Assembly: GCA_053919585.1 (NCBI GenBank)
Contig: CM132786.1
Reading direction: 5' to 3' (one strand)
DNA length: 63,826 bases
DNA from: Euprymna scolopes
Lineage: Eukaryota
The position numbers and the translations under genes were made by a program. Positions within the stretch are counted from its first letter, which is position 1. Every line of letters begins with the position of its first letter. The notes under the pieces are model-generated. The model did no database searches. It was not told where the DNA came from and saw nothing but the letters and a program-made list of their open reading frames with translations. Positions 13,225-63,826 of the stretch are shown here, in pieces.

Positions 13225-13228
<4 letters not shown>

Positions 13229-13594
13229 TTAAAATTGACAGAGTTATTGCGTAGGGAAATGTACACACACAGACACACAGATACACACACAGATAGATAC
13301 ACAGACACGTTCACTTTTATAGATATGCTAGAATGGGTGCCCGCGTTGCCCGGGTGTGTGGAGTTTTACTAAGTTACATCCATGTCCAAGGAACCTATCT
13401 CTATAATTTCAAGTGTTTAGACCCAAAATTGTCGGAGGAGTTTCGTAGAGTTCTCAACGGCCTAATGTTGAACTTTGATCCCTTTATCGTCAAATTTCTG
13501 GCCGAACGCCGATCATATCAATTTTCCCAAATCTCAGTACACTGTATATCAAATATTGAGTCTGTAGAAAAAAATTGACAGAGAGAGAAAGAGA

Positions 13595-13625
<31 letters not shown>

Positions 13626-13676
13626 GCATGCATACAGACAGACAGGCAGACAGCAGACAGATACACAGACACGTTC

Positions 13677-13680
<4 letters not shown>
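13225..13680 (-). mobile_element. non-autonomous Helitron (Lep1-like), one full plus one partial copy in tandem
   Basis: CTAG plus hairpin GGGTGCCCGCGTTGCCCGGGT at 13329; (ACAG)n-CACGTTCAYTT end at ~13310 and ~13670; homologous to 46054-46480. Confidence 0.7.
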
Positions 13681-13734
<54 letters not shown>

Positions 13735-13777
13735 TTGTATCTGTGTGTGATTGTATGTGTGTGTACATAAACACACA

Positions 13778-13846
<69 letters not shown>

Positions 13847-14536
13847 TGCGTAACCGCTTCTTGCAGATCTAAAGTTACTCGAGAATAACAAGTCAGGACG
13901 TCTCAATTAAGATCGTAATGCGGCAAATACGGAAATGTTTGATTATTTAACTAGATGACTCAAACATTTTGCTTACATTGTACTAAAAACGAAATGGTGT
14001 CGTTACATTTGATGCAACCTATTAACATCGTGTTACGAGCCGATTATTTTTTAGAAAAAAAAAACCTTGCCTATAAAATCGTCGTTTAGTTTATTCACAA
14101 AGTTAATGTTGTTGTTATTAGACATATATTGTGTTTGGTATTTTAACTAGTAGATCTGAGTTGAGCAAAAACATCACGTTTAAAGGTAGATTCGTTAGGT
14201 CTTTTTCGATCAGAACGAGAAATAGGGAAAAAAGTGGATCGTCGAACAGATTTCGAAGCCGATTTCGCATTAGATCAAGGCATGAAACGTGCGCTAGGCA
14301 GCTTCACTTCAGGTCGTACGTTATTGGTTTATTGTGAGTGTAGCGGTTTATGCCGGGAGTTCTGGAGCAATATAATTATCCAATTATTTTTTCCGTCCAC
14401 CCTGTCTAAGCATCTGATGTATACCTTTTATGTTAACGGTGTTTTTGTCTTAGAAGTTTGTAACATCAATCTGCCTCCTCAAAACGAGAATGACCATGTG
14501 AAATTGGTTCTAAGTAGGGTTCACGGCGCAAGACAT

Positions 14537-14590
<54 letters not shown>

Positions 14591-14699
14591 CTATGTATGT
14601 ATTTATATAATAATATATGCACAATCAATAAACAAACTCTTATTCACTATGTTATTGATTTGCTAGCTCGACTGTACATATAAACAAGTAAAAAATTGG

Positions 14700-15000
14700 A
14701 CGTTATAATACTTAAGAAAGAAAGGAACCTAAATAAATTGGGGATTTTCGTATCGAAGCAGATCACAGGGTGAGAATCAAGCATATAGAACAAAAAACTG
14801 CAGAATTTTGCACCGAATCGAAAAAAATATTGAACTTGAAAACTCAATATAATACAGAGAAATTAAGCAATACTACGAACAGTTCTAAATAATAAATCAA
14901 CGGGAATACTGAGACTATGCAACGGAAGGTAATTCTGAAAACAGCGGAAATATTAACAAAACCCTTCGAATATGGCCACTAATTAACATGATATATAAAC
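14700..15000 (+). mobile_element. possible PLE N-terminal remnant
   Basis: QNFAP and PLRIWPLIN traces resemble PLE GLNFAP and PLRPIVS motifs. Confidence 0.25.
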
Positions 15001-15289
15001 GCTAACCGAGTTCAACGAAACTGTTACAAAAATGAAAGAAGGATGTAATTAAGAAAGCTGAATAAAAAAGTAAGCTGATAAGCATCCCGTTCTCAAAGTA
15101 ATATATATATATTTAAAAAAATTGTATATTCGGCATCGACTAGCACTATACCAAATATTCGAGGGATCAATGGATTTGGTAAAAAAGGTGAAGAGGAAAA
15201 GACTAAACAAGGCCTTCACTGAATGGGTTCGAAGAGGGCTAATAGCTAAGTAAGGGTTACTGACCCACAAATTAAAATTATGTCTAAAA

Positions 15290-15613
15290 AAACCCGTCTA
15301 GCTGAAACAAATGTCAATAATTTTCCCCTCTATTTATCTTTGCCTTAATCAAAGCGTAGATTCCATGAACAAAGTTTCTTTCTTAGAAGTGCCGCCTATT
15401 GAATTCTCTTCCGTTTTCCTGTTTCCAACCTGACTACAACTTGTATGTCTTCAAGTCCAACATAAACAAATTCCTGATAAACCGTCCCCTTAAGGCACAT
15501 TATCAAATATCTATTAAAAAAAATTCTTGTAGATTACTGTACACGCAATAACCCTTTGCCCCTAGTTGCATCCGGGCCTTGAAAAGTTGTGAATACCATG
15601 TAAAAAAAAAAAA
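15290..15613 (+). mobile_element. 5'-truncated CR1-group LINE 3' end
   Basis: homologous to 26510-26839; ends ...CCATGT followed by an A-tail. Confidence 0.7.
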
Positions 15614-16497
15614 TAAGTGTCAGAAATTGACACCAAGCGACTGTTGCAATAGTGCAAATTCATTTGAAAAAGTTGTTGAAATAGATTAGATGTACCGGGT
15701 ATTTGGGACGACTTGTTGCCATCCATGTGTGGGGAACACAACTGATTATTTTTAATAAGTATTCTGCGATGATGCCATGTGTGAAAACTACGACTACTGT
15801 TACTACTAATAGTCATAAGAATTATTAATGTTATTCTTATTATTTTACCATAAATATTAGTTCATCCTAACTACAATTGTTTGTAAACTAAATTAGAAAA
15901 ATAATTATCAGTTCTTTGTTAATAATTAAGAACAGTTATTTTATTTTCCGCAGTATGACAATACATTATAGGCGACAACGAACTCTAAATAGTTAGTTGT
16001 GTGTTATGGAATCTTGGAGATTACGTATCATCTCTGATACCCAGCACTCTCAACGTCTTTCGATAAGCAGGGGATACGTATTAGTGAATCGAAATAGCCG
16101 TTTACCATCAAAAAGCCTCGACATTCGACATATATTCACCCCACAAATCCCGTGTAGTCATTTTAACGCATTCAATCTATTAATATCTCAATAGTTTTTG
16201 ATATTTCACGCGAAATAAAATTTAGTTTGCCTTAACAATTGCAACACATGAGTGCATGTGTATGCGTTTCAAAATGATGTAAGTTATAAGATTTTTGAAG
16301 TTTATACCAACCGTAGTTCGGAACATGTGTTTTCCTTATCGTTGTTTTTTGGGGNNNNNNNNNNNNNNNNNNNNNNNNNNNNNNNNNNNNNNNNNNNNNN
16401 NNNNNNNNNNNNNNNNNNNNNNNNNNNNNNNNNNNNNNNNNNNNNNNNNNNNNNNNNNNNNNNNNNNNNNNNNNNNNNNNNNNNNNNNNNNNNNNNN

Positions 16498-16901
16498 ACT
16501 GTTTCGCTGTACAACAACACATCAGTGCACCTAGACATGCCCCTTTCCCCATCCGTGGATCGTACCTACAAACATCGCATTGAATCAGTGCCGTCTGTAT
16601 CTCTCCTCGAGTGTGTACTTAATCCACACCCGTTCGTCGCAACTCTGCTCTAGCCATCGGCTTTTTATTTACGTGCAAATTAAAAGTGCGTTCGTTAAAT
16701 AGCTTAAATATGCGTCGGGTGAAAATTTATTTACAAAGTGCTATACATTGTTTTTGCTAAGACTCAAAAGAGAGGGGGTAAATCGTCATCTACATACAGA
16801 ACTGTTTCGTTGTATCACAACTTATCAGTCCGGCTAGACATACACCTTTTCCCAGTCGTGGATCGAACCTACAACCGTCGCATTGACATTGGGCAGTTCT
16901 C
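16498..16901 (-). mobile_element. tRNA-Asp-headed hammerhead element, partial head-to-tail dimer (period ~303 bp)
   Basis: reverse complement: AATGTCAATGCGACGGTTGTAGGTTCGATCCACGACTGGGAA (tRNA-Asp-like, B box) then CTGATAA-GTTG-TGATA-CAAC-GAAA-CAG-TT-CTG-TA^TGTAGATGAC; ACTGTTTCG recurs at 16498 and 16801. Confidence 0.8.
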
Positions 16902-17284
16902 NNNNNNNNNNNNNNNNNNNNNNNNNNNNNNNNNNNNNNNNNNNNNNNNNNNNNNNNNNNNNNNNNNNNNNNNNNNNNNNNNNNNNNNNNNNNNNNNNNN
17001 NNNNNNNNNNNNNNNNNNNNNNNNNNNNNNNNNNNNNNNNNNNNNNNNNNNNNNNNNNNNNNNNNNNNNNNNNNNNNAATATGAAAACGCTCATATCTTT
17101 GATTCTATGGTGCGAAATTAAATGTGAATTTGCAGGGTTTTTTGTAAGATTATTCTCTTATGATGATTAGTAAAAAAAACAATCTTATTTTCCAACCAAG
17201 TTTTCCTATATTTGTGTATATAATGTCCTAGCAGCTAGCTTCAGTTCCCCTGTCTCCCGTGAAATAGAGCCAGGTTACTAACTA

Positions 17285-17340
<56 letters not shown>

Positions 17341-17810
17341 TAAAACTACAATTAAATTAACCAAAATGATTGAAGATGGTAAAACTAACGTATATTGTTA
17401 ATATTAAAGAATTAATATTTATAAAGTAATCTCAGCCAGATGTAAAAGCTCGATAAAACCAANNNNNNNNNNNNNNNNNNNNNNNNNNNNNNNNNNNNNN
17501 NNNNNNNNNNNNNNNNNNNNNNNNNNNNNNNNNNNNNNNNNNNNNNNNNNNNNNNNNNNNNNNNNNNNNNNNNNNNNNNNNNNNNNNNNNNNNNNNNNNN
17601 NNNNNNNNNNNNNNNAAAAACAAAATACATAGAAAGTATATCTTGAACACCTGCGGTAGAACTGTGAAAAAAGTTCAAAATCCTAGTGTTTTGATTGTGA
17701 GGTTTTAAATATTATAAACTAGTTATGACCAAAGTTTACTTTCATTTGGACCAAAAACTAAGAAACGGGATCTAATTAGAGTCGGGCCCCGTTTTTGTTT
17801 TCGGTCACCC

Positions 17811-17875
<65 letters not shown>

Positions 17876-18076
17876 TTATAGGAGATTAGAACAATAGTCT
17901 AAAGAGCTGAGTGTATTTCAATGTAACAGTGAAATTACTAGTTTAATTAAAATACAGGAACGAGAAAGTGCTCGTTGTAATTTAGATATATAATAAGCTC
18001 GATAGGTAAATATCTTAGAGCTAATTCAATTTAATTATAATTTGATTTTAAAATTTTAAATTATCAATCACATTAC

Positions 18077-18131
<55 letters not shown>

Positions 18132-18171
18132 CATTTAATCCTTTAAGATGTGCAAGCTATCACTAGTCCCC

Positions 18172-18219
<48 letters not shown>

Positions 18220-18516
18220 ATACATACATATATTGTAAGTACGCTAGCTTACTATTTTTATTGGTTTCCTCTTATAATCCCTTTTTTCATTTTTCTGCAC
18301 TGAGGGTAGAATTAAGACTTACAGTAAAGAAAATGTGCTATTAAGCATTATCTGTGATGATATTGGACTTGCAATGTGTGTGCATGATATATCTTCAGTA
18401 TTAGATCGTTTTTTCTCTAAATTGTTCAACTCGGGAAATTAATTTCAAGCTTACCCGATCGGGGACAGATTTCATTCTTTTATATGCATACACCTTAGAT
18501 ACTATTCCCCGACATT

Positions 18517-18567
<51 letters not shown>

Positions 18568-20394
18568 TTTTATTAATATATATATATGCATATATGTCAT
18601 TGGTTAATCTATCATAGCTTCATACACACACACGCACCCACCCACATACACACCCNNNNNNNNNNNNNNNNNNNNNNNNNNNNNNNNNNNNNNNNNNNNN
18701 NNNNNNNNNNNNNNNNNNNNNNNNNNNNNNNNNNNNNNNNNNNNNNNNNNNNNNNNNNNNNNNNNNNNNNNNNNNNNNNNNNNNNNNNNNNNNNNNNNNN
18801 NNNNNNNNNNNNNNNNNNNNNNNNNNNNNNNNNNNNNNNNNNNNNNNNNNNNNNNNNNNNNNNNNNNNNNNNNNNNNNNNNNGTATGTGTATTACTTTTA
18901 ATTCAATTGAACATAATAAGGTAGGTTACAAGTGAAAACTGCCAAGCAATCTAATTGAATATTTCGCGAATTTTTTCATGTGCAACTTTTAAAAACGTTT
19001 TTCACCGATTTGATTCGGTTTTCCTTTTCCCTTTGTTCGATTTCCTTTTTTATTTATACATTTTTGTAAGGGTGAGCTTTCATTTCCTGCTATCACTGCG
19101 TCAAACCTTCATCATTCGCGAGTTTTCGTCCACGTGATTTTTCTTCCATCATCATCTGCCTTTTATTTATTTTTTTATTTCCCATCCTTACTTAGAGCGA
19201 CCCATACACAGCCTTTTTCATCTTTGTCAATACATTAATCAACTGTTATTGAGCCTTGGGGGACATTACTGCATGTCGACGCAAACAATGCGTCGGCCCA
19301 TTTTCTAGGTGGGTACGGAAATGAACATGACAGGGAAGGGAAAATCTATTTATTTCATGAAAAAATGTTTTTTCATGTGAGTTTATAAACCCGCAATAGT
19401 CCTATTCCTTTCACTTTTCGTAGGTAATATCAAGGATATTAATAACAATGTCGGTTATATGTCTTATATAACTGGCAAATATATTAAGAATGACAAGCTG
19501 AACATATTAAAATCAAATAGGGTATGCTTTTTAATAGAAATTCGGCTGAGATTGTATATTTTAAACAATAATACATATACAGTTTAAGCCTGCTTTGTCA
19601 AATACGAAGGCAATCTAAAGGAAATGTTATATGTGTTCAGTAGCCTGAAATTCATGTCAAATTTTCTAAACTCGTTTTAAATATTTGCAAGCTATATTCC
19701 ATATGTTTCGCGATTATTCTGTACTAACATTTTAAATTGTGAAGGCTTTTAAAATTCAGATTATTCCTAAACATCTTGACTGCCCAAATTTTATGATTTA
19801 AGGTTAAAAAAACAGTCAAAAGAAGAATTGGAAAAACAAACTTGATTGTGAAAGATGGGTAATTTCCAAAATGATATCTATATGTGCAAAAAAAAATTAG
19901 ACGTAGAATATGCAATGAAATTTTGTTTAAAGCTTGAAAAACATGGCATAAGAACGTATGGAATGTTTCAGTAATGTTGGGTGCCATATTACATTAATCG
20001 TGCAACAGTCTTTGAGTTGCACGAGAGATTCAATGAATGTAAGAAGTCTGGGATATAGTGGGAGGTGTGAGAGGAGTAAGAAAATCAGAACACAAAGTTA
20101 CTTTGACAAATATTAAATCCCGTTAATGAGGAGCGTTGCGTTTCTATAGACAAAATAAGAGCACAGTTATTTTATAACTAATACGAGCAACCACTAGTCC
20201 TTTATGTTATTTCCTCTATTATAATTTTCTTGTTNNNNNNNNNNNNNNNNNNNNNNNNNNNNNNNNNNNNNNNNNNNNNNNNNNNNNNNNNNNNNNNNNN
20301 NNNNNNNNNNNNNNNNNNNNNNNNNNNNNNNNNNNNNNNNNNNNNNNNNNNNNNNNNNNNNNNNNNNNNNNNNNNNNNNNNNNNNNNCCATTTT

Positions 20395-20572
20395 ATAGTA
20401 TGAGGTCCAATGCAATGTCGGATGTATGCTGCCGGTTGCGTGATCTGTGTAGGTTTATAGGCATTCTGATGTGTGTGTCGTGTTTGCTTAATTGGTAGAG
20501 TGCTCGCCTAGCATACAGGAGGCTCGAGTTTAGAATTCCGAATTCGGATGTGTCTAAGTGATGTGCCGAAAT
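20395..20572 (+). mobile_element. tRNA-Ala(AGC)-headed element with truncated hammerhead
   Basis: GCTTAATTGGTAGAGTGCTCGCCTAGCATACAGGAGGCTCGAGTTTAGAATTCCG is tRNA-Ala-like; following GGATGTGTCTAAGTGATGTGCCGAAATA matches the 39680-39710 HHR lead-in; upstream 80 bp homologous to 39460-39540. Confidence 0.65.
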
Positions 20573-20582
20573 ACACACTGAT

Positions 20583-21028
20583 TCGTGGCCCGATGGTTAG
20601 AACAGCCGACTGTCAACTCGACGGTTTAAGGTTCGATCTAGAGCTGGGGAAAGGTGTATGTCTACCCGCACTGAAAAGTTGTTATACTAAGAAACATGAC
20701 TGTATATGCATGACAAATAAAAAGCCCCCTCTTTGGGTTGAGCATTTTGTAAATATATTGTCACCCGACGCGTATTTAAGAAATTAAGCGAAACCCACTA
20801 TTAATTTGTTTGTAAACAAACTTATGGTTTGAGCACTGTAAGCGACGGGCGAGTGTGAATGAAATACACACCTGAAGAGTACTTTACTACACATTTATGT
20901 GAAGCTTGATGGTTAGAACAGCTGACTTTAAACTCGACGGTCGTAGGTTGGACCCAAGGCTGGGGAAAGGTGTATGTCTCGCCGCACTGATGAATGATGA
21001 TACAACGAAACAGTCCCGTATATGGACT

Positions 21029-21030
<2 letters not shown>
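20583..21030 (+). mobile_element. tRNA-Asp-headed hammerhead element, partial head-to-tail dimer (period ~316 bp)
   Basis: A box GTGGCCCGATGGTTAG, anticodon loop CTGTCAA, B box GGTTCGATC, then HHR cores at ~20671 and ~20986 (CTGATGA..CAAC-GAAA-CAG); spacer homologous to 16590-16790. Confidence 0.8.
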
Positions 21031-21110
<80 letters not shown>

Positions 21111-22658
21111 CGTTTTTATATTAAAAAAAATATTCATAAAAATACTTTTTAAAACAATTCAAGGTAATTTTCTTGATCCATGGTCGTTAGAATTATGCAG
21201 ACGATAATTTTTAATAACTTAATTTTTAACTCTGATGGAGTCACATCAAGTTTTATAGTAAACACACACATCTATTTTTGCTAACTTTTATCCCCCTCTT
21301 TTTGAATATTTATTCTAAGGGATTGGATTATAGTTTATGTTTTTGTTCTTTCCCCACTAACATAGGACACAATATAATATAACTTTTTATTTGACTAGGA
21401 TTGTCTTATATAAAAATATTGCTTCCCAGGACTAATTGTAAATAGTGTCATTCCATCAATGAATTAAAAAAAAATTGGCGAATTTAGACAAAATAACGAT
21501 GATAAAGTTCAGCAGTTATATCGACAAAAACGTTGATTATAACAGTAGTACGGACTTTTTTGGATAATATAAGTCTCATCCTGTTTCTATCTTTCTTAGA
21601 AAAAATAGGCAAACAGTTATATGCATTGACTTTAGTTATATGTCCATGAAAAAAACAAAGAGTTTTCTACATCGATAACTCTTTTGAAATAAGGTTTTAC
21701 TTTCATTTTCAGAATTGTATTCCTGCGTTCCAATCTTTAACTATACCATCATCCGTGTAGTTTTGCAGATCAAACGACAGTCCAGCTAAATCTTGTTCCA
21801 ACGCGGCCAATGTGCAATTAAAATAGTGTCCAGTAGGCTTTTTCGTTTGGAACGCCATTTTCGTGGTCCTTTTAATTCCTCTCCCTTTTTTGATGTTTTC
21901 AATTTTTATCTTGGATTTTCTCCTCATGTAAAATGCATTCCTTATTTCACTGCATACACATTAGAGTCTTAATAATGTCTTATTTAACGAAATACATTTG
22001 AATGCTTTGTTTGATATTTTCTTATTTTTAAGACATTGCATATAATAAGATTGTTGCGTACTGACATCAGGAGAAAAATGAGATGAAGAGAGAAAGAAGT
22101 TCATATAAACCAATAGACATAGGAAAATCCCGGCCTTCTTGTCAAGATGTTTGTCACGTGATTATGGACTATATTTATACATAAATATATAATTCACCAT
22201 ATACATATAGGGGTTACAAATATTTGTTACAGCTCCGCGGGGTGGGCCTACATACTTTAATTTATTAATTTCATTAGTGTTCTGGCGATAGCTTGAGGAT
22301 AATATTTTTACTGCTCATTCAAAAATAATTATACTTCTAGAGATTGAATGGAACACACCTGCTTTTAGTAGTGTTTTAGTCTTCTTAATTTTATTAAACG
22401 CTTTGAGTAGCGCTATGAATTTTATTGTATTACCACTGCTTACTCTTGTATTATTCTGTTTTCTTCATGATATTTTGCAAAAGAAAGTGTCAGAGAAATA
22501 AGCGAAAGTATTATACCGCACTTAAGTGCCATTAAAAATTATCATACATTCTTAATATAAGTAGCAAGGACCCTGTACAAAATAATAACACAAAAATGTA
22601 CTTTGAGTCGATTAGTCATTGCTTTAACTAAGTAAGTTCAGAATTTGTATAAAAGTCA

Positions 22659-35558: not shown

Positions 35559-35860
35559 TATGTTTAAAGAAAAAAATAGAAAAAAACCGAATGAAATTAT
35601 TAAAAAATCAACGTTTCGTCCTTGTTTCCGAGGACATCTTCAGGATAATTGAAATAAAAATGTGATAAAAGAAAAAGTCATAGATCGTGCGAAAAACATG
35701 GGTTGGATTTTAAAAAACTGTCTTTTTTCGCACGATCTATGACTTTTTTCTTTTATCACATTTTTATTTCAATTATCCTGAAGATGTCCTCGGAAACAAG
35801 GACGAAACGTTTATTTTTTAATTATTTCATTCGGTTTTTTCTATTTTTTCTTTAAACATA
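35559..35860. repeat. near-perfect palindrome (arms ~138 bp, loop ~27 bp) with a hammerhead motif in each arm
   Basis: 35559-35696 is the reverse complement of ~35724-35860; CTGAAGA-T-GTCCT-CGGAAACA-AGGAC-GAAA-CGTT at 35778-35811 (+) and mirror copy at ~35608-35643 (-). Confidence 0.9.
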
Positions 35861-51684: not shown

Positions 51685-51793
51685 GGCATAATCGCGTTGA
51701 CACACCGGTTCTAGTCAGATGACCGAAGTTAAGTAACGTTGAGCCTGGTTACTATCAGATGGGTGGTCATTTGGGAGATCTAAGCGCTGTACG
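51682..51793 (+). pseudogene. 5S rRNA pseudogene (or 5S-derived SINE head)
   Basis: TACGGCATAATCGCGTTGACACACCGGTTCTAGTCAGATGACCGAAGTTAAGTAACGTTGAGCCTGGTTACTATCAGATGGGTGGTCATTTGGGA..GCTGTA is collinear with metazoan 5S rRNA, with many substitutions. Confidence 0.85.
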
Positions 51794-52329
51794 TGCTCTC
51801 CGCTTATCTGGGCATTTTTCCCGTACTTCACTTGTTACTGGCATTTAACAATGTCGACTCAGGAGAGGTGTGGTTTTATATTGCTCACGTCGTGTTAAAA
51901 CAATTTCACGAGCAAGCAACATTCTTTTGTATCCATAGTCTGTCTAAGACTGAAAGAGCCTGCACACACACACACACACACACACACGCACATATATATA
52001 TATATATATACACATATATATTGTGTTAGTAAAATGAAAAAGTATATATAATCTAGCTACAACGAGTTTTCCGCGGTTAACGTTTTTGGATACTAGTCTG
52101 TCTATTGCCTGGCGCTAGGAGACGAAAATAAAATGTGGACTAGTTTGTCCAGGTTAATAGGCATATATATTTCCATACAATCTGCATAGCTAAATTCATG
52201 CATTCAGCAGTTTTCAAGAAAAATACTGAACATCGATATATAGTATATTATATAAGTTCATATAATCTATATTGTTCTCATAATAATATGTTCTAATGCA
52301 CCTCTATTTTAGTCGGTACTGATGTAATT

Positions 52330-61712: not shown

Positions 61713-63826
61713 TCATATTTCGTAGTCTCTCATCCACTGTGGCGGTCGACTCTCTCTATTCGGCCTCTGAGGTGTCTCGTCCTCCTCCTGTTGCTGCACA
61801 TTCCCCTCCATTGCTTCGCCTTCCACTGGTCTTATGTCGAGAATATGCCTCGGTACTGCGTCCACCACAATATTGTTTCTGGTGTTCCTCCCAGTCACGC
61901 GATCTCTACTCCATTGTGTGGTGCAGCACGACCCCCGTGGCTTCGACCATACCTCATCCCCGAGTTTAATGGTCCATGTGGCCTCTGCCTCTCTGCTTGC
62001 CGGATCAACCCTGGGATGTCTCCAGGAATATGCGAATGTTGACAGTTGCGGAACCGTCTCTGGCACTTACCCCAATCTAGGCGACATATTATACTAGTAG
62101 ATGACTTGCTCAGATAAGTTGCCTCCTCTTTCCGCAACTGTCTTTTTGGTGTGGTGGTTTCTCTCCACGATCCCGTTTCCACTGAGTCTGTAGGCAGCTC
62201 TGAAAATTTTTTTAAATATTCCACCTCCTCATTACTTCCGTCACTGCTACTTACTTGAATGCGCTCCCGTTTTCGGTTAACAACTCTTCCACGGGACCTC
62301 GATCCAAAAACACCTCATCGAGGATGGCCGCTATTTCATTGGCTGTTCCTCCTCGTAGCTTCTTCAATAGAGCAACACGCAGTCAATCATGGTCAGGTAA
62401 AGTCCATCCTGTAATGGATGACATCGCATGCCAGTCTCTCCCAGGTCCCACCTACCCCCAATTGACCAGCTTCATGCGTGGTTGGAGCAGGATCAATCGA
62501 CTGACATCTGTCACATGTCCTGACCACTTCCCTCACTTGCTCCTGACACTCGGGTCGACTTTATTCACCAAGTACCACGCCCCATCCACCCCAATATGCT
62601 TCGGATATTGCAGCTCTCGCACGTCAATCCGATGCAGCAACAACATCTTTCTTTGGCAAAAGCCAACTCTTCTTCTCTCTCGTGAGAGCATCTACTCGGT
62701 TCTTCTCAGAAGCCGCCATGTCTACGGGAAGCTCCAAACAAAACTCCTGCATCAGCTACGCTTGCATCCCAAGCCTGCGCTTCACTAAAATCCCCTTTCA
62801 TTCTTATCCTTTATCCGGGGCAGATTCTTTTTTGATGCAGATGTCACGCAGTCCCCATTTCAAGGCCATATTGAGCACTTTGATTACCGCATCTAATTCC
62901 ACTACATTGATGTGGCTGGCATCATTTTTCTTCCTTAACCAGGCCGCATCTTCTGCAACCACTCCTCCAATTTCCAAAACGACCCCTGTTGCAAGCTGCT
63001 TGCATAAGACCACACGACTCCATCCAATGTTCGCGGTACGTTCCAGGTTCCCCGGACTGGATCTTGGCGTTCTGCTTCGTTCACGAGCTCTTCCCCATGG
63101 CGACCGTTCTTCCTCACACTTTATCATTCCATCCTTTTCCTTCTACATGCCCCTTTAGGTAGCTGCATGCTGGTCTAATCCAGCTAGCAACGGGGTAATG
63201 TCCGATACATTCCTGCATAGGGGAAAAGGCTCCTGTCTATTGAACTGTTGCTTCAGTTGCGGGATGTCGTTCCCCCCTGCGTTAATCCAGGCTGCCCGAC
63301 GCACCTCGTTTCACCCTTAGCCCCAAAGCAGCTCCTCCGTTTAATTTTTCAGGCTCTTTGGTGACCAACCCAAACCTCATCAAATGAGCCACCACCTCCT
63401 TGGCAGTTACCAGATTCTCATTCACCAGAATATCGTCTATGTATGAGATCACTGCCCAATCTCCTTTTCCTATTATCTCCAGAATCTTCCTGAGGATAGT
63501 CGACATGATCTTCGGTACCGACTTCAACCCGAACGCCACTCGCGTAAGGCAGTAGGTGTTGCCTTTGTACCTGACTAACATGTATTTCCAGAACTTCTTG
63601 GCGATGTTGAGTTGCAAATAGGCAGATTTTAGATCTACCAACGTAGACGCGCCATTCATCCGCCTCCATTCTCTAATGGTCTCACTGCACACATCTACGG
63701 TTTCACCTCCAGTATGGCACTTAACATGTTGGGTCAGCTCTCGGAAATCCAGGACCGGTCTTACTTTCCGTTTAGTTGGTTGTAGAACGGCCATCAACGA
63801 CAAAATGCCCGACTCAACGTCATCTA
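61713..63826 (-). mobile_element. Ty3/gypsy-like LTR retrotransposon pol remnant (RT, RNase H, deleted integrase), runs off the window
   Basis: VRPVLDFREL, VDLKSAYLQ, RVAFGL, SYIDDILV (63282-63803); RNase H ASSL/ATGVVLE..HINVVELDAV; frameshifted C-terminal pieces. Confidence 0.9.

What the first reader, a model, noticed from the sequence alone, without database searches (positions are those of the whole stretch)
16498..21030. tRNA-Asp-headed hammerhead retrozyme: Pol III promoter fused to a self-cleaving ribozyme in ~300-320 bp tandem units
Seen: five copies (13103-13177, 16498, 16781-16901, 20583-20715, 20900-21030) share a tRNA-Asp(GTC)-like head (A box GTGGCCCGATGGTTAG, loop CTGTCAA, B box GGTTCGATCC). 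About 20 nt later comes a type-I hammerhead with consensus GCCGCA-CTGATGA-G(C/T)TG-N5-CA(G/A)C-GAAA-CAG-NN-CTG-TA^TGTAGATG. Stem II covaries (GCTG/CAGC, GTTG/CAAC, GTTG/CAGC). At two loci the unit is a partial head-to-tail dimer with a homologous spacer. Established: metazoan non-LTR retrozymes are tandem HHR repeats that yield circular RNAs, and Schistosoma Sm-alpha joins a tRNA-related head to an HHR. Inference: this is a Pol III-driven family that self-cleaves to monomers/circles and is retrotransposed by PLE machinery. Each copy here has at least one core or stem lesion, so the active master lies elsewhere.
Basis: partly seen in the sequence, partly recalled or inferred. Interest (0 to 1): 0.85.

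Follow-up and report, generated by a model that had tools for sequence, protein, structure and literature searches.

The report
tRNA-headed hammerhead SINE, Penelope-style insertions
These are decayed copies of an abundant mollusc mobile element that joins a tRNA-like head to a hammerhead ribozyme and inserts into (TA)n repeats as Penelope-like retrotransposons do; it is real, but it is a new member of a known kind (Schistosoma Sm-alpha, animal retrozymes), not a new kind.

Summary
The observation largely holds. Four of the five listed places carry a tRNA-like head (A and B boxes), and about 30 nt later a type I hammerhead. The fifth (13127-13177) is only a 51-nt ribozyme module with no head.

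All window copies have lesions, but the family is intact elsewhere in this 5.9-Gb mollusc genome. There are 16,095 exact matches to CTGATGA-N13-GAAACAGTACTGTA, against 0 in the reversed control. One stem II pair is compensated: 75 C-G, 18 U-A and 7 other in a sample of 100.

The unit is about 311 nt (a sister family about 283 nt). Insertions have a fixed 3' end 10-12 nt past the cleavage site, nearly always followed by (TA)n. Their 5' ends vary (0.4-2.4 units) and there is no poly-A. This is the insertion pattern described for Penelope-like elements.

Stem III is a palindrome that cannot close in a single copy. Two copies co-fold into a double hammerhead.

Not shown:
- tRNA-Asp ancestry (no Rfam tRNA hit)
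- Pol III transcription
- cleavage in vivo (poly-A reads cross the site)
- circular RNA
- the autonomous partner

The closest knowns are Sm-alpha and the non-LTR retrozymes. This scan has noted the same kind of element elsewhere in this genome.

The parts
13127..13177 (+). 51-nt hammerhead module of the sister family (stem II GCTG/CAGC). Core lesion CCGATGA (U4C) and a G>A change in stem I. There is no tRNA-like head: it reads as a severely 5'-truncated insertion.
   Evidence: 98% identical to family B modules. Upstream, 12983-13100 belongs to a different repeat.
13178..13226 (.). (TA)n directly after the 3' end of the module
   Evidence: The same junction (GATGAC + TATATA) is seen 3,758 times in the genome.
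16844..16901 (-). 3' part of the tRNA-like head (B box GGTTCGATCC). Its 5' part is lost in the assembly gap at 16902-17077.
   Evidence: unit positions 193-250.
16785..16843 (-). Linker plus hammerhead, with lesions (CTGATAA, GCCGGA, TGTAGATG). It continues into the next unit, so it is an internal ribozyme of a partial dimer.
16600..16784 (-). Spacer of the next unit (about 185 nt), including the conserved T4 run
16498..16599 (-). Degenerate head (A-box half deleted, B box GGTACGATCC) and the 5' part of a second hammerhead (CTGATGT). Cut off by the assembly gap at 16355-16497.
20578..20655 (+). tRNA-like head: A box TGGCCCGATGG, loop CTGTCAA, B box GGTTCGATCT. The insertion's 5' end lies at or a few nt before the head start.
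   Evidence: unit positions 173-250.
20656..20716 (+). Linker plus degenerate hammerhead (CTGAAAA, broken stem II). It is internal, followed by a spacer.
20717..20893 (+). Spacer (here TTG in place of the T4 run)
20894..20975 (+). Second tRNA-like head plus linker
20976..21032 (+). Terminal hammerhead. The core CTGATGA/GAAA is intact, but stems II and III are broken. This is the 3' end of the insertion.
21033..21075 (.). (TA)n directly after the insertion's 3' end
   Evidence: This is the same pattern as 21-24 of 28 sampled insertions.

Best explanation
This is a non-coding, non-autonomous retroelement family. Each unit of about 311 nt consists of a roughly 185-nt spacer, a roughly 75-nt tRNA-like head with A and B boxes, a roughly 20-nt linker, and a 55-nt type I hammerhead.

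Shown directly:
- The family is dispersed over all large scaffolds, in thousands of copies.
- Insertions end at a fixed point 10-12 nt past the ribozyme cleavage site (..GTA^TGTGGATGAC(AA)), nearly always followed by (TA)n.
- Their 5' ends fall anywhere in the unit, giving lengths of 0.4 to 2.4 units.
- There is no poly-A tail and no target duplication outside the TA repeat.
- A sister family with another head and body shares an almost identical 56-nt ribozyme module.
- The ribozyme module is the best conserved part of the element.

Inferred:
- Copies are made by target-primed reverse transcription that starts at the 3' border of the ribozyme module on a (TA)n nick.
- The enzyme is most likely that of a Penelope-like element. 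Such elements are very abundant and young in this genome and also end in (TA)n.
- Templates longer than one unit are needed, so they must be either multimeric transcripts of tandem source copies or circles.
- Stem III is a palindrome (ACAGUACUGU) that cannot close in one copy. The ribozyme should therefore cut only when two copies pair as a double hammerhead, in a tandem transcript or in trans. That would release unit-length RNA, as described for Schistosoma Sm-alpha, newt satellite 2 and axolotl retrozymes.
- The tRNA-like head may act as an internal Pol III promoter, so that an upstream unit drives the downstream ones. This is plausible but untested.
For: Anatomy and ends:
- 29 insertions, 27 with the same 3' end. 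5' ends are scattered. 3' (TA)n is present in 21-24 of 28 and 5' (TA)n in 12 of 28.

Abundance:
- 3,265 first-look candidates.
- 13,491 exact 25-mers.
- 16,095 intact cores, 0 in the reversed control.

Tandemness:
- family A, 127 internal against 197 terminal junctions.
- family B, 653 internal against 3,758 terminal junctions. Arrays reach at least 6 units.

Ribozyme:
- Core and helices read directly.
- stem II pair is 75 C-G, 18 U-A, 2 U.G and 5 mismatched.
- 94.9% of cells are paired, against 12-48% when the structure is slid.
- two modules co-fold as a double hammerhead at -36.8 kcal/mol, against 2 x -13.8.

Constraint:
- the ribozyme module agrees 98.4% with the commonest base, against 95.5% for the head and 95.8% for the spacer.

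Module sharing:
- only 56 nt are similar between the two families. RNA reads show further heads joined to the same module.

Penelope-like context:
- 15,395 GIY-YIG candidates, with open frames up to 870 aa.
- their copies also end in (TA)n and carry a minimal hammerhead-like core.
- Published traits of these elements (5' truncation, partial tandems, a ribozyme near the 3' end, (TA)n targets): PMC8557442.
- Retrozymes as non-autonomous Penelope derivatives: bioRxiv 10.64898/2026.07.22.740005.
- Sm-alpha logic (promoter followed by ribozyme, Pol III, tandem needed): PMC6765202.
Against: - No autonomous element with this ribozyme module was found. The one abundant Penelope-like family examined has an unrelated 3' end.
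- Rfam scores are far below threshold: 17-25 bits on the Hammerhead_3 model, where the gathering score is 48.5. The window copies give no hit at all.
- In three poly-A RNA runs the reads cross the cleavage site and no ends pile up there. Reads come from both strands at about 2:1. Head and spacer of this family are covered only 5-20x, against about 600x for the shared module.
- The A box is the least conserved stretch (85.6%). A conserved T4 run about 44 nt into the spacer would stop Pol III before the next unit.
- The whole unit is not unusually structured (z = -1.67).
- Covariation amounts to a single pair, probably a single event.
Confidence: 0.62

Rival explanations
1. It is the same Penelope-type non-autonomous element, but the tRNA-like head is a fossil with no promoter role. 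Transcripts come from read-through or Pol II. The hammerhead module serves mainly as the 3' handle that the reverse transcriptase recognises, and cleavage is incidental or rare.
For: - No tRNA model hit.
- The A box is the least conserved part.
- A conserved T4 run lies in the spacer.
- Most insertions carry spacer 5' of the head.
- Poly-A reads from both strands cross the cleavage site uncleaved.
- About 85% of family B ribozymes are single and cannot dimerise in cis.
- The role of the ribozyme in Penelope-like elements is called unclear in PMC8557442.
Against: - At least two, and by RNA loose ends several, families with different bodies all keep a B-box-bearing head about 30 nt upstream of the module.
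- The catalytic core is letter-perfect in 16,095 copies, and stem II is kept through a compensatory change.
- Four of 29 insertions begin within 7 nt of the head's position +1. About 0.8 would be expected, but the window was chosen post hoc.
- Family B has no T4 run in its unit.
Confidence: 0.27
2. It is an ordinary LINE-dependent tRNA-derived SINE whose body happens to contain a hammerhead-like motif.
For: It has a tRNA-like head with A and B boxes, a high copy number and a dispersed distribution.
Against: - No poly-A or LINE-type tail.
- The 3' end is the ribozyme itself plus (TA)n.
- Insertions do not start at the head. They run through upstream spacers for up to 2.4 units.
- The ribozyme module is the most conserved part and is shared between families.
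Confidence: 0.05
3. It is a satellite or minisatellite spread by unequal crossing-over and segmental duplication, not by retrotransposition.
For: Head-to-tail arrays with periods of 283-316 bp exist, some with 6 or more units.
Against: - Thousands of separate loci lie on all large scaffolds, with different flanks.
- The 3' end is constant and the 5' truncation varies.
- (TA)n sits at the junctions.
- Most loci hold fewer than 2 units.
Confidence: 0.03

Closest known systems
Sm-alpha / Sj-alpha SINE-like elements of Schistosoma (Ferbeyre et al. 1998, as described in PMC6765202, PMC2770079 and PMC8490949)
   Same: - A tRNA-related head with Pol III-type boxes followed by a type I hammerhead.
- A unit of about 300-335 bp.
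- Found both dispersed and in tandem, in thousands of copies.
- The promoter lies upstream of the ribozyme, so a cleaved monomer carries the promoter near its 3' end and tandem source copies are needed.
   Different: - The host phylum differs (mollusc, not flatworm).
- No sequence similarity was tested, because no Sm-alpha sequence was available from a tool.
- Here the head does not score as a tRNA, whereas Sm-alpha copies are called tRNA-Gln by tRNAscan.
- Stem III is a perfect 10-nt palindrome that needs dimerisation.
- Insertion ends and a (TA)n association are documented here.
- Cleavage and Pol III transcription are shown for Sm-alpha but not here.
Metazoan non-LTR retrozymes (Cervera and de la Pena 2020, PMC7229834; Li, Clavereau and Pollet 2026, bioRxiv 10.64898/2026.07.22.740005)
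   Same: - Type I hammerhead in non-coding units of 170-400 bp.
- Monomers, dimers and multimers occur.
- No LTR, PBS or PPT was seen when reading the copies.
- Proposed dependence on Penelope-like elements.
- A dimer-dependent ribozyme, as in axolotl HHR_Amex1.
   Different: - Those papers do not describe a tRNA-like head: 'tRNA' appears there only for the ligase.
- Circular RNA is shown for retrozymes but is not testable here.
- The unit here is not significantly self-paired (z = -1.67).
- Most loci here are shorter than 2 units.
Penelope-like elements and their pseudo-LTR hammerheads (PMC4209133, PMC8557442, Lunse et al. 2017)
   Same: - 5' truncation and partial tandems.
- The ribozyme sits next to the 3' end.
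- (TA)n insertion bias.
- A ribozyme that works as a dimer.
   Different: - There is no ORF.
- The ribozyme here has a real, though palindromic, helix III and a 4-bp helix II. It is unlike the minimal cores in this genome's own Penelope-like copies.
- No sequence is shared with the Penelope-like family examined.

Membership tests
Hammerhead ribozyme, type I | Conserved core CUGANGA ... GAAA and a cleavable NUH site | tested here: met
   The family-typical copy reads GCCGCA-CUGAUGA-GUUG-UGAUA-CAAC-GAAA-CAG-UA-CUG-UA^U. There are 16,095 exact matches to the core pattern and 0 in the reversed control. All five window copies carry lesions.
Hammerhead ribozyme, type I | Three helices around the core, with helix I open | tested here: met
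94.9% of cells are paired, against 12-48% when the structure is slid.
Hammerhead ribozyme, type I | Compensatory changes that keep the helices | tested here: met
   One pair of helix II: 75 C-G, 18 U-A, 2 U.G and 5 mismatched in a sample of 100; UA 22, CG 8 and UG 1 on alignment A2. It is a single pair and probably a single event, so the support is modest.
Hammerhead ribozyme, type I | Reaches the Rfam gathering score | tested here: not met
   The best hits are 17-25 bits on the Hammerhead_3 model, where the gathering score is 48.5. The window copies give none. The short palindromic helix III fits the curated models poorly.
Hammerhead ribozyme, type I | Self-cleavage | not testable with these tools
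   Poly-A RNA reads cross the site without a pile-up of ends. This is uninformative for a dimer-dependent ribozyme in single-copy contexts.
Sm-alpha-like SINE (tRNA-related head plus hammerhead) | Pol III A and B boxes upstream of the ribozyme | tested here: met
   The A box TAGCCGAATGG / TGGCCTGATGG lies at unit positions 181-191 and the B box GGTTCGATCC at 225-235, about 30 nt before CUGAUGA. The same layout is seen in the sister family.
Sm-alpha-like SINE (tRNA-related head plus hammerhead) | Head derived from a tRNA | tested here: inconclusive
   ARAGORN finds none and there is no Rfam tRNA hit at E<=10 on 171 nt. Local similarity to the genome's own tRNA-Asp(GTC) gives z 1.5-6.9, and the best stretch (17 of 21) covers the B box and the 3' acceptor. 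The 'GTC' loop is not kept in the sister family.
Sm-alpha-like SINE (tRNA-related head plus hammerhead) | Transcription by Pol III | not testable with these tools
   Only poly-A libraries were available as raw reads. The T4 run in the family A spacer and the weak A-box conservation argue for caution.
Non-LTR retrozyme | Type I hammerhead in every unit of a short tandem repeat (170-400 bp) | tested here: met
   Units are 311-316 bp (family A) and 283-284 bp (family B). For perfect ribozymes, internal against terminal junctions are 127 against 197 and 653 against 3,758. Arrays of 6 or more units exist. Most loci, however, hold fewer than 2 units.
Non-LTR retrozyme | Expressed as small circular RNA | not testable with these tools
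   Poly-A libraries only. The back-joints seen (3-4 reads) are equally explained by tandem DNA copies.
Non-LTR retrozyme | Highly self-paired unit | tested here: inconclusive
   The linear unit folds at -92 kcal/mol, z = -1.67, and 5 of 100 shuffles fold as well.
Penelope-dependent non-autonomous element | Insertion signature: fixed 3' end, variable 5' truncation, partial tandems, (TA)n | tested here: met
   The signature is as published in PMC8557442.
Penelope-dependent non-autonomous element | 3' end shared with an autonomous Penelope-like element of the same genome | tested here: not met
   The one abundant family examined (L051-L062) shows no similarity to either unit. Its tail carries a different minimal core.
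Classical LINE-dependent SINE | Monomer starting at the tRNA 5' end and ending in poly-A or a LINE tail | tested here: not met
   There is no poly-A. The 3' end is the ribozyme plus (TA)n. Only 4 of 29 insertions start at the head, and 17 of 29 exceed one unit or carry spacer 5' of the head.

The most novel reading that the evidence does not exclude
The heads are live Pol III promoters. On this reading, tandem source copies give multimeric transcripts that the dimer-only hammerheads cut into unit-length RNA. That RNA is ligated into circles of about 311 nt or 283 nt. A Penelope-like reverse transcriptase then copies the circles by rolling circle, starting at the 3' border of the ribozyme on a (TA)n nick. 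The 56-nt ribozyme module would be the portable 'handle' that different tRNA-headed bodies have acquired. This would be the first worked-out case of a Pol III SINE head coupled to Penelope-type mobilisation, found in a mollusc genome.
Probability: 0.22. Interest if true: 0.6.

Novelty: new member of a known kind. Interest (0 to 1): 0.4.

Why it matters
This gives a large natural data set: more than 16,000 ribozymes with an intact core, several families, and clean insertion ends. Three open questions about hammerheads in animal genomes could be tested on it:
- what the ribozyme does for Penelope-type retrotransposition;
- whether a Pol III-type head can drive such elements;
- whether circles or multimers are the template.

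The genome looks like that of a decapodiform cephalopod. This is my inference from its size, its 46 or more large scaffolds and its 'mollusc' run labels; it is not shown. If so, the family would belong to the large 'unclassified' repeat fraction of genomes that are reported to have almost no SINEs (PMC13218726). None of this changes how such elements are thought to work.

Tried and rejected
1. 'The terminal ribozyme of each insertion is deliberately dead (U4C, CCGATGA), so that the 3' end is not cut off.' Six loci suggested this, but those loci had been picked with a CCGATGA query. Genome counts reject it: U4C makes up 23 of 3,758 terminal and 3 of 653 internal ribozymes.

2. 'The 51-nt module at 13127-13177 was added by template switching.' The simpler reading is an extreme 5' truncation sitting next to another repeat. 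This was not pursued.

3. Rfam searches gave nothing usable: gathering threshold on the window, E-value mode on 12800-21400, six loci, and 171 nt. There were only sub-threshold Hammerhead_3 hits and many microsatellite 'miRNA' artefacts.

4. The autonomous partner was not found. The GIY-YIG search turned up a very abundant Penelope-like family, but its tail is unrelated.

I had spent part of it on a tRNA search that returned only a tRNA-Thr array. Exact-pattern counts were used instead.

7. 5'-end clustering: there are weak excesses at the head start (4 of 29) and around the unit junction or cleavage site (7 of 29). The windows were chosen post hoc and the sample was picked by similarity to head plus ribozyme, so I treat these only as hints.

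8. Ceph-SINEs were considered from the literature only (PMC5786205) and not compared by sequence.

9. My first circular-fold script timed out. The linear fold from the tool was used instead.

Full report
**What is in the window**

Reading the sequence and aligning the five listed places shows two real multi-part loci and one fragment.

- Minus strand, 16785-16901 holds the 3' part of a tRNA-like head, a linker and a hammerhead. This runs on without a break into a spacer (16600-16784), a degenerate second head and the 5' part of a second hammerhead (16498-16599).
- Plus strand, 20578-20716 holds head plus hammerhead. It is followed by a spacer, a second head and a terminal hammerhead (20721-21032), and then by (TA)n.
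- The fifth place, 13103-13177, has no head. Only 13127-13177 belongs: a 51-nt hammerhead module followed by (TA)n, joined upstream to a different repeat.

**Gaps**

- The minus-strand locus is cut at both ends by assembly gaps (16355-16497 and 16902-17077). Its length and its ends are unknown. I did not fill them.
- The plus-strand locus has no gap.
- The 3.7 kb between the two loci is unrelated (TA)n-rich DNA with three more gaps.
- The finding's span therefore covers two independent insertions on opposite strands.

**The family**

The window lies on scaffold C4 of a 5.9-Gb assembly. RNA runs that hold the sequence are labelled mollusc.

- A BLAST of one copy against the genome gave 3,265 first-look candidates, the best about 90% identical.
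- The 25-mer 3' half of the ribozyme occurs 13,491 times. The pattern CTGATGA-N13-GAAACAGTACTGTA occurs 16,095 times. The reversed controls give 0.
- In 29 fetched loci the unit is 311-316 nt: a spacer of about 185 nt, a head of about 75 nt, a linker of about 20 nt and a ribozyme of 55 nt.
- A sister family ('B', unit 283-284 nt) has a different head and body. It shares a 56-nt ribozyme module at 93% identity, and that is the only stretch BLAST recognises between the two units.
- In a sample of 100 intact ribozymes, about 60% are B-type, 18% are of the finding's type and about 8% are a third type.
- Loose ends of RNA reads show further heads joined to the same module.

**The ribozyme**

The family-typical copy reads GCCGCA-CUGAUGA-GUUG-UGAUA-CAAC-GAAA-CAG-UA-CUG-UA^U-GUGGAUGAC. 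This is the full hammerhead core with helix I open, which makes it type I.

- Helix II is kept through a compensatory change. In 100 random intact copies the second pair is C-G 75 times, U-A 18 times, U.G twice and mismatched 5 times.
- On a 32-sequence alignment, 94.9% of cells pair, against 12-48% when the structure is slid. One pair changes on both sides. That is one pair and probably one event, so the support is real but modest.
- Helix III is the palindrome ACAGUACUGU.
- Two copies co-fold into exactly a double hammerhead with a 10-bp intermolecular helix III, at -36.8 kcal/mol against 2 x -13.8. This is the dimer-only behaviour known from newt satellite 2, the hammerheads of Penelope-like elements and axolotl retrozymes (PMC7761336, PMC7229834).
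- Rfam does not call it. The best scores are 17-25 bits on the Hammerhead_3 model, where the gathering score is 48.5. The window copies give nothing.

**The head**

- A and B boxes are present, with the right spacing, about 30 nt before the ribozyme. This holds in both families.
- ARAGORN finds no tRNA.
- The Rfam tRNA model gives no hit on 171 nt even at E<=10.
- I pulled the genome's own tRNA-Asp(GTC) and compared it with the heads. Local similarity gives z 1.5-6.9. The best stretch is the B box plus the 3' acceptor, 17 of 21.
- The 'GTC' loop is not kept in the sister family.
- A tRNA origin is plausible. The Asp label is not established.

**How copies are made**

- Of 29 insertions, 27 end at the same point, GATGAC with 0-3 further A or T. 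That is 10-12 nt past the cleavage site.
- 21-24 of 28 are followed at once by (TA)n. 12 of 28 also have (TA)n on the 5' side.
- No target duplication outside TA was seen, and there is no poly-A.
- The 5' ends fall all over the unit, giving 0.42 to 2.44 units.
- Genome counts of exact junctions agree. For family B, 3,758 ribozymes are followed by TATATAT and 653 by the next unit. For the finding's family, 197 are followed by AATATATA and 127 by the next unit. Arrays of 6 or more units exist.
- A fixed 3' end, 5' truncation, partial tandems, a ribozyme next to the 3' end and (TA)n targets are the published hallmarks of Penelope-like elements (PMC8557442).
- The genome is full of young copies of such elements: 15,395 GIY-YIG candidates, with open frames up to 870 aa. 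Their copies also end in (TA)n.
- The 3' end of the one family I could read is unrelated to the module, so the partner is not identified.

**What the ends say about the template**

- The 3' end lies beyond the cleavage site, so a self-cleaved linear monomer cannot be the template.
- Most insertions carry spacer 5' of the head, so a transcript that starts at its own head and ends at the first terminator cannot be the template either.
- What remains is multimeric transcripts of tandem source copies, or circles. Priming would be at the 3' border of the ribozyme.
- Four of 29 insertions start within 7 nt of the head's position +1. Seven start within about 20 nt of the unit junction or cleavage site. 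Both are weak, post hoc hints. I could not enlarge the sample.

**Constraint**

Within the 29 units, agreement with the commonest base is as follows:

| Part | Agreement |
|---|---|
| Ribozyme module | 98.4% |
| Head | 95.5% |
| Spacer | 95.8% |
| A box | 85.6% |
| B box | 95.9% |

Head and ribozyme were both in the query that picked the loci, so the difference between those two is not a selection artefact. A T4 run about 44 nt into the spacer is kept in most copies of this family and is absent from the family B unit.

**RNA**

I laid three poly-A raw-read runs of the same species label on one locus.

- Depth is about 600x on the shared module and only 5-20x on this family's head and spacer.
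- Reads come from both strands at about 2:1.
- Reads run across the cleavage site, and no pile-up of ends is seen.
- This shows that module-bearing elements sit in poly-adenylated transcripts. It says little about a dimer-dependent ribozyme, Pol III products or circles, all of which such libraries exclude.
- The linear unit is not unusually structured (z = -1.67).

**Comparison with what is known**

- The layout (promoter-like tRNA-related head, then a type I hammerhead, in units of about 300 bp that are both dispersed and tandem) is the layout described for Schistosoma Sm-alpha. That description includes the point that a cleaved monomer carries its promoter near the 3' end, so tandem source copies are needed (PMC6765202, PMC2770079).
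[quoted passage not shown] Those papers do not mention a tRNA-like head.
- I found no paper linking such elements to cephalopods or to this sequence.
- I therefore class it as a new member of a known kind.
- This scan has noted the same kind of element on other pieces of this genome and twice more in this window.

**Verdict**

The element is real, abundant and well defined. Mobilisation of the Penelope type is strongly suggested by the insertion ends. The ribozyme is canonical and probably works only as a dimer. Pol III transcription, tRNA-Asp ancestry, cleavage in vivo, circles and the partner element remain unshown.

Noticed in passing
window 20470-20570: Directly 5' of the plus-strand copy lies a different tRNA-like head. 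It looks like tRNA-Ala(AGC): TTGGTAGAGTGCTCGCCTAGCATACAGGAGG. It is followed by the start of another hammerhead family (GTCTAAGTGATGTGCC..). Either the family A copy was inserted into it, or the two were joined.
   Followed up: partly
window 35559-35860: A near-perfect palindrome of about 300 bp. Each arm ends in a minimal hammerhead of the Penelope-like type (CTGAAGATGTCCTCGGAAACAAGGACGAAACG). The right side runs into an assembly gap.
   Followed up: no
window 39303-39798: A divergent inverted pair from a third hammerhead family, with a B-box-like stretch (TTCGAATCCCG) about 19 nt before GTCTAACTGATTAGCCC..GGGGGAAAC. It ends near (TA)n.
   Followed up: no
window 12983-13100: A separate repeat family (686 first-look candidates, about 80% identity) abuts the headless hammerhead module.
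   Followed up: partly
window 51679-51795: A 5S rRNA match above the Rfam gathering score (49 bits, E 3.6e-07). It is a lone copy and may be a 5S-derived repeat.
   Followed up: no
window 42833-43855 and 63282-63803: An intact-looking 340-aa Tc1/mariner-type transposase ORF (HTH_Tnp_Tc3_2, DDE_3), and a reverse-transcriptase fragment at the window's end (RVT_1, below cut-off).
   Followed up: no
G000 C11:1.68-2.16 Mb (loci L063-L092): A very large array of tRNA genes, almost all tRNA-Thr (TGT or AGT) with some tRNA-Lys. There are 627 ARAGORN calls in 30 overlapping 3-kb loci, giving 109 distinct sequences.
   Followed up: partly
G000 C19:127.555-127.581 Mb and C14:19.09-19.37 Mb: Tandem arrays of tRNA-Asp(GTC) genes with a period of about 335 bp. 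There are 714 matches to a 28-nt probe. Most carry GGTTCAA instead of GGTTCGA in the T arm.
   Followed up: partly
loci L051-L062 (e.g. L058:782-3252, minus strand): A very young, abundant Penelope-like family with ORFs of 806-870 aa and many inverted pairs. Its tail carries CTTGAAGAAGCCCGCATAAATCGGGCGAAACG, which is a hammerhead core with one extra or changed base. It ends in (TA)n at two alternative points.
   Followed up: partly
loci L040 and L050: Family B insertions in which the terminal ribozyme module is joined directly to the spacer, or to a truncated ribozyme, skipping the head. The junctions show 3-4 nt of microhomology (AGC/CAGC). This suggests template jumps or deletions.
   Followed up: no
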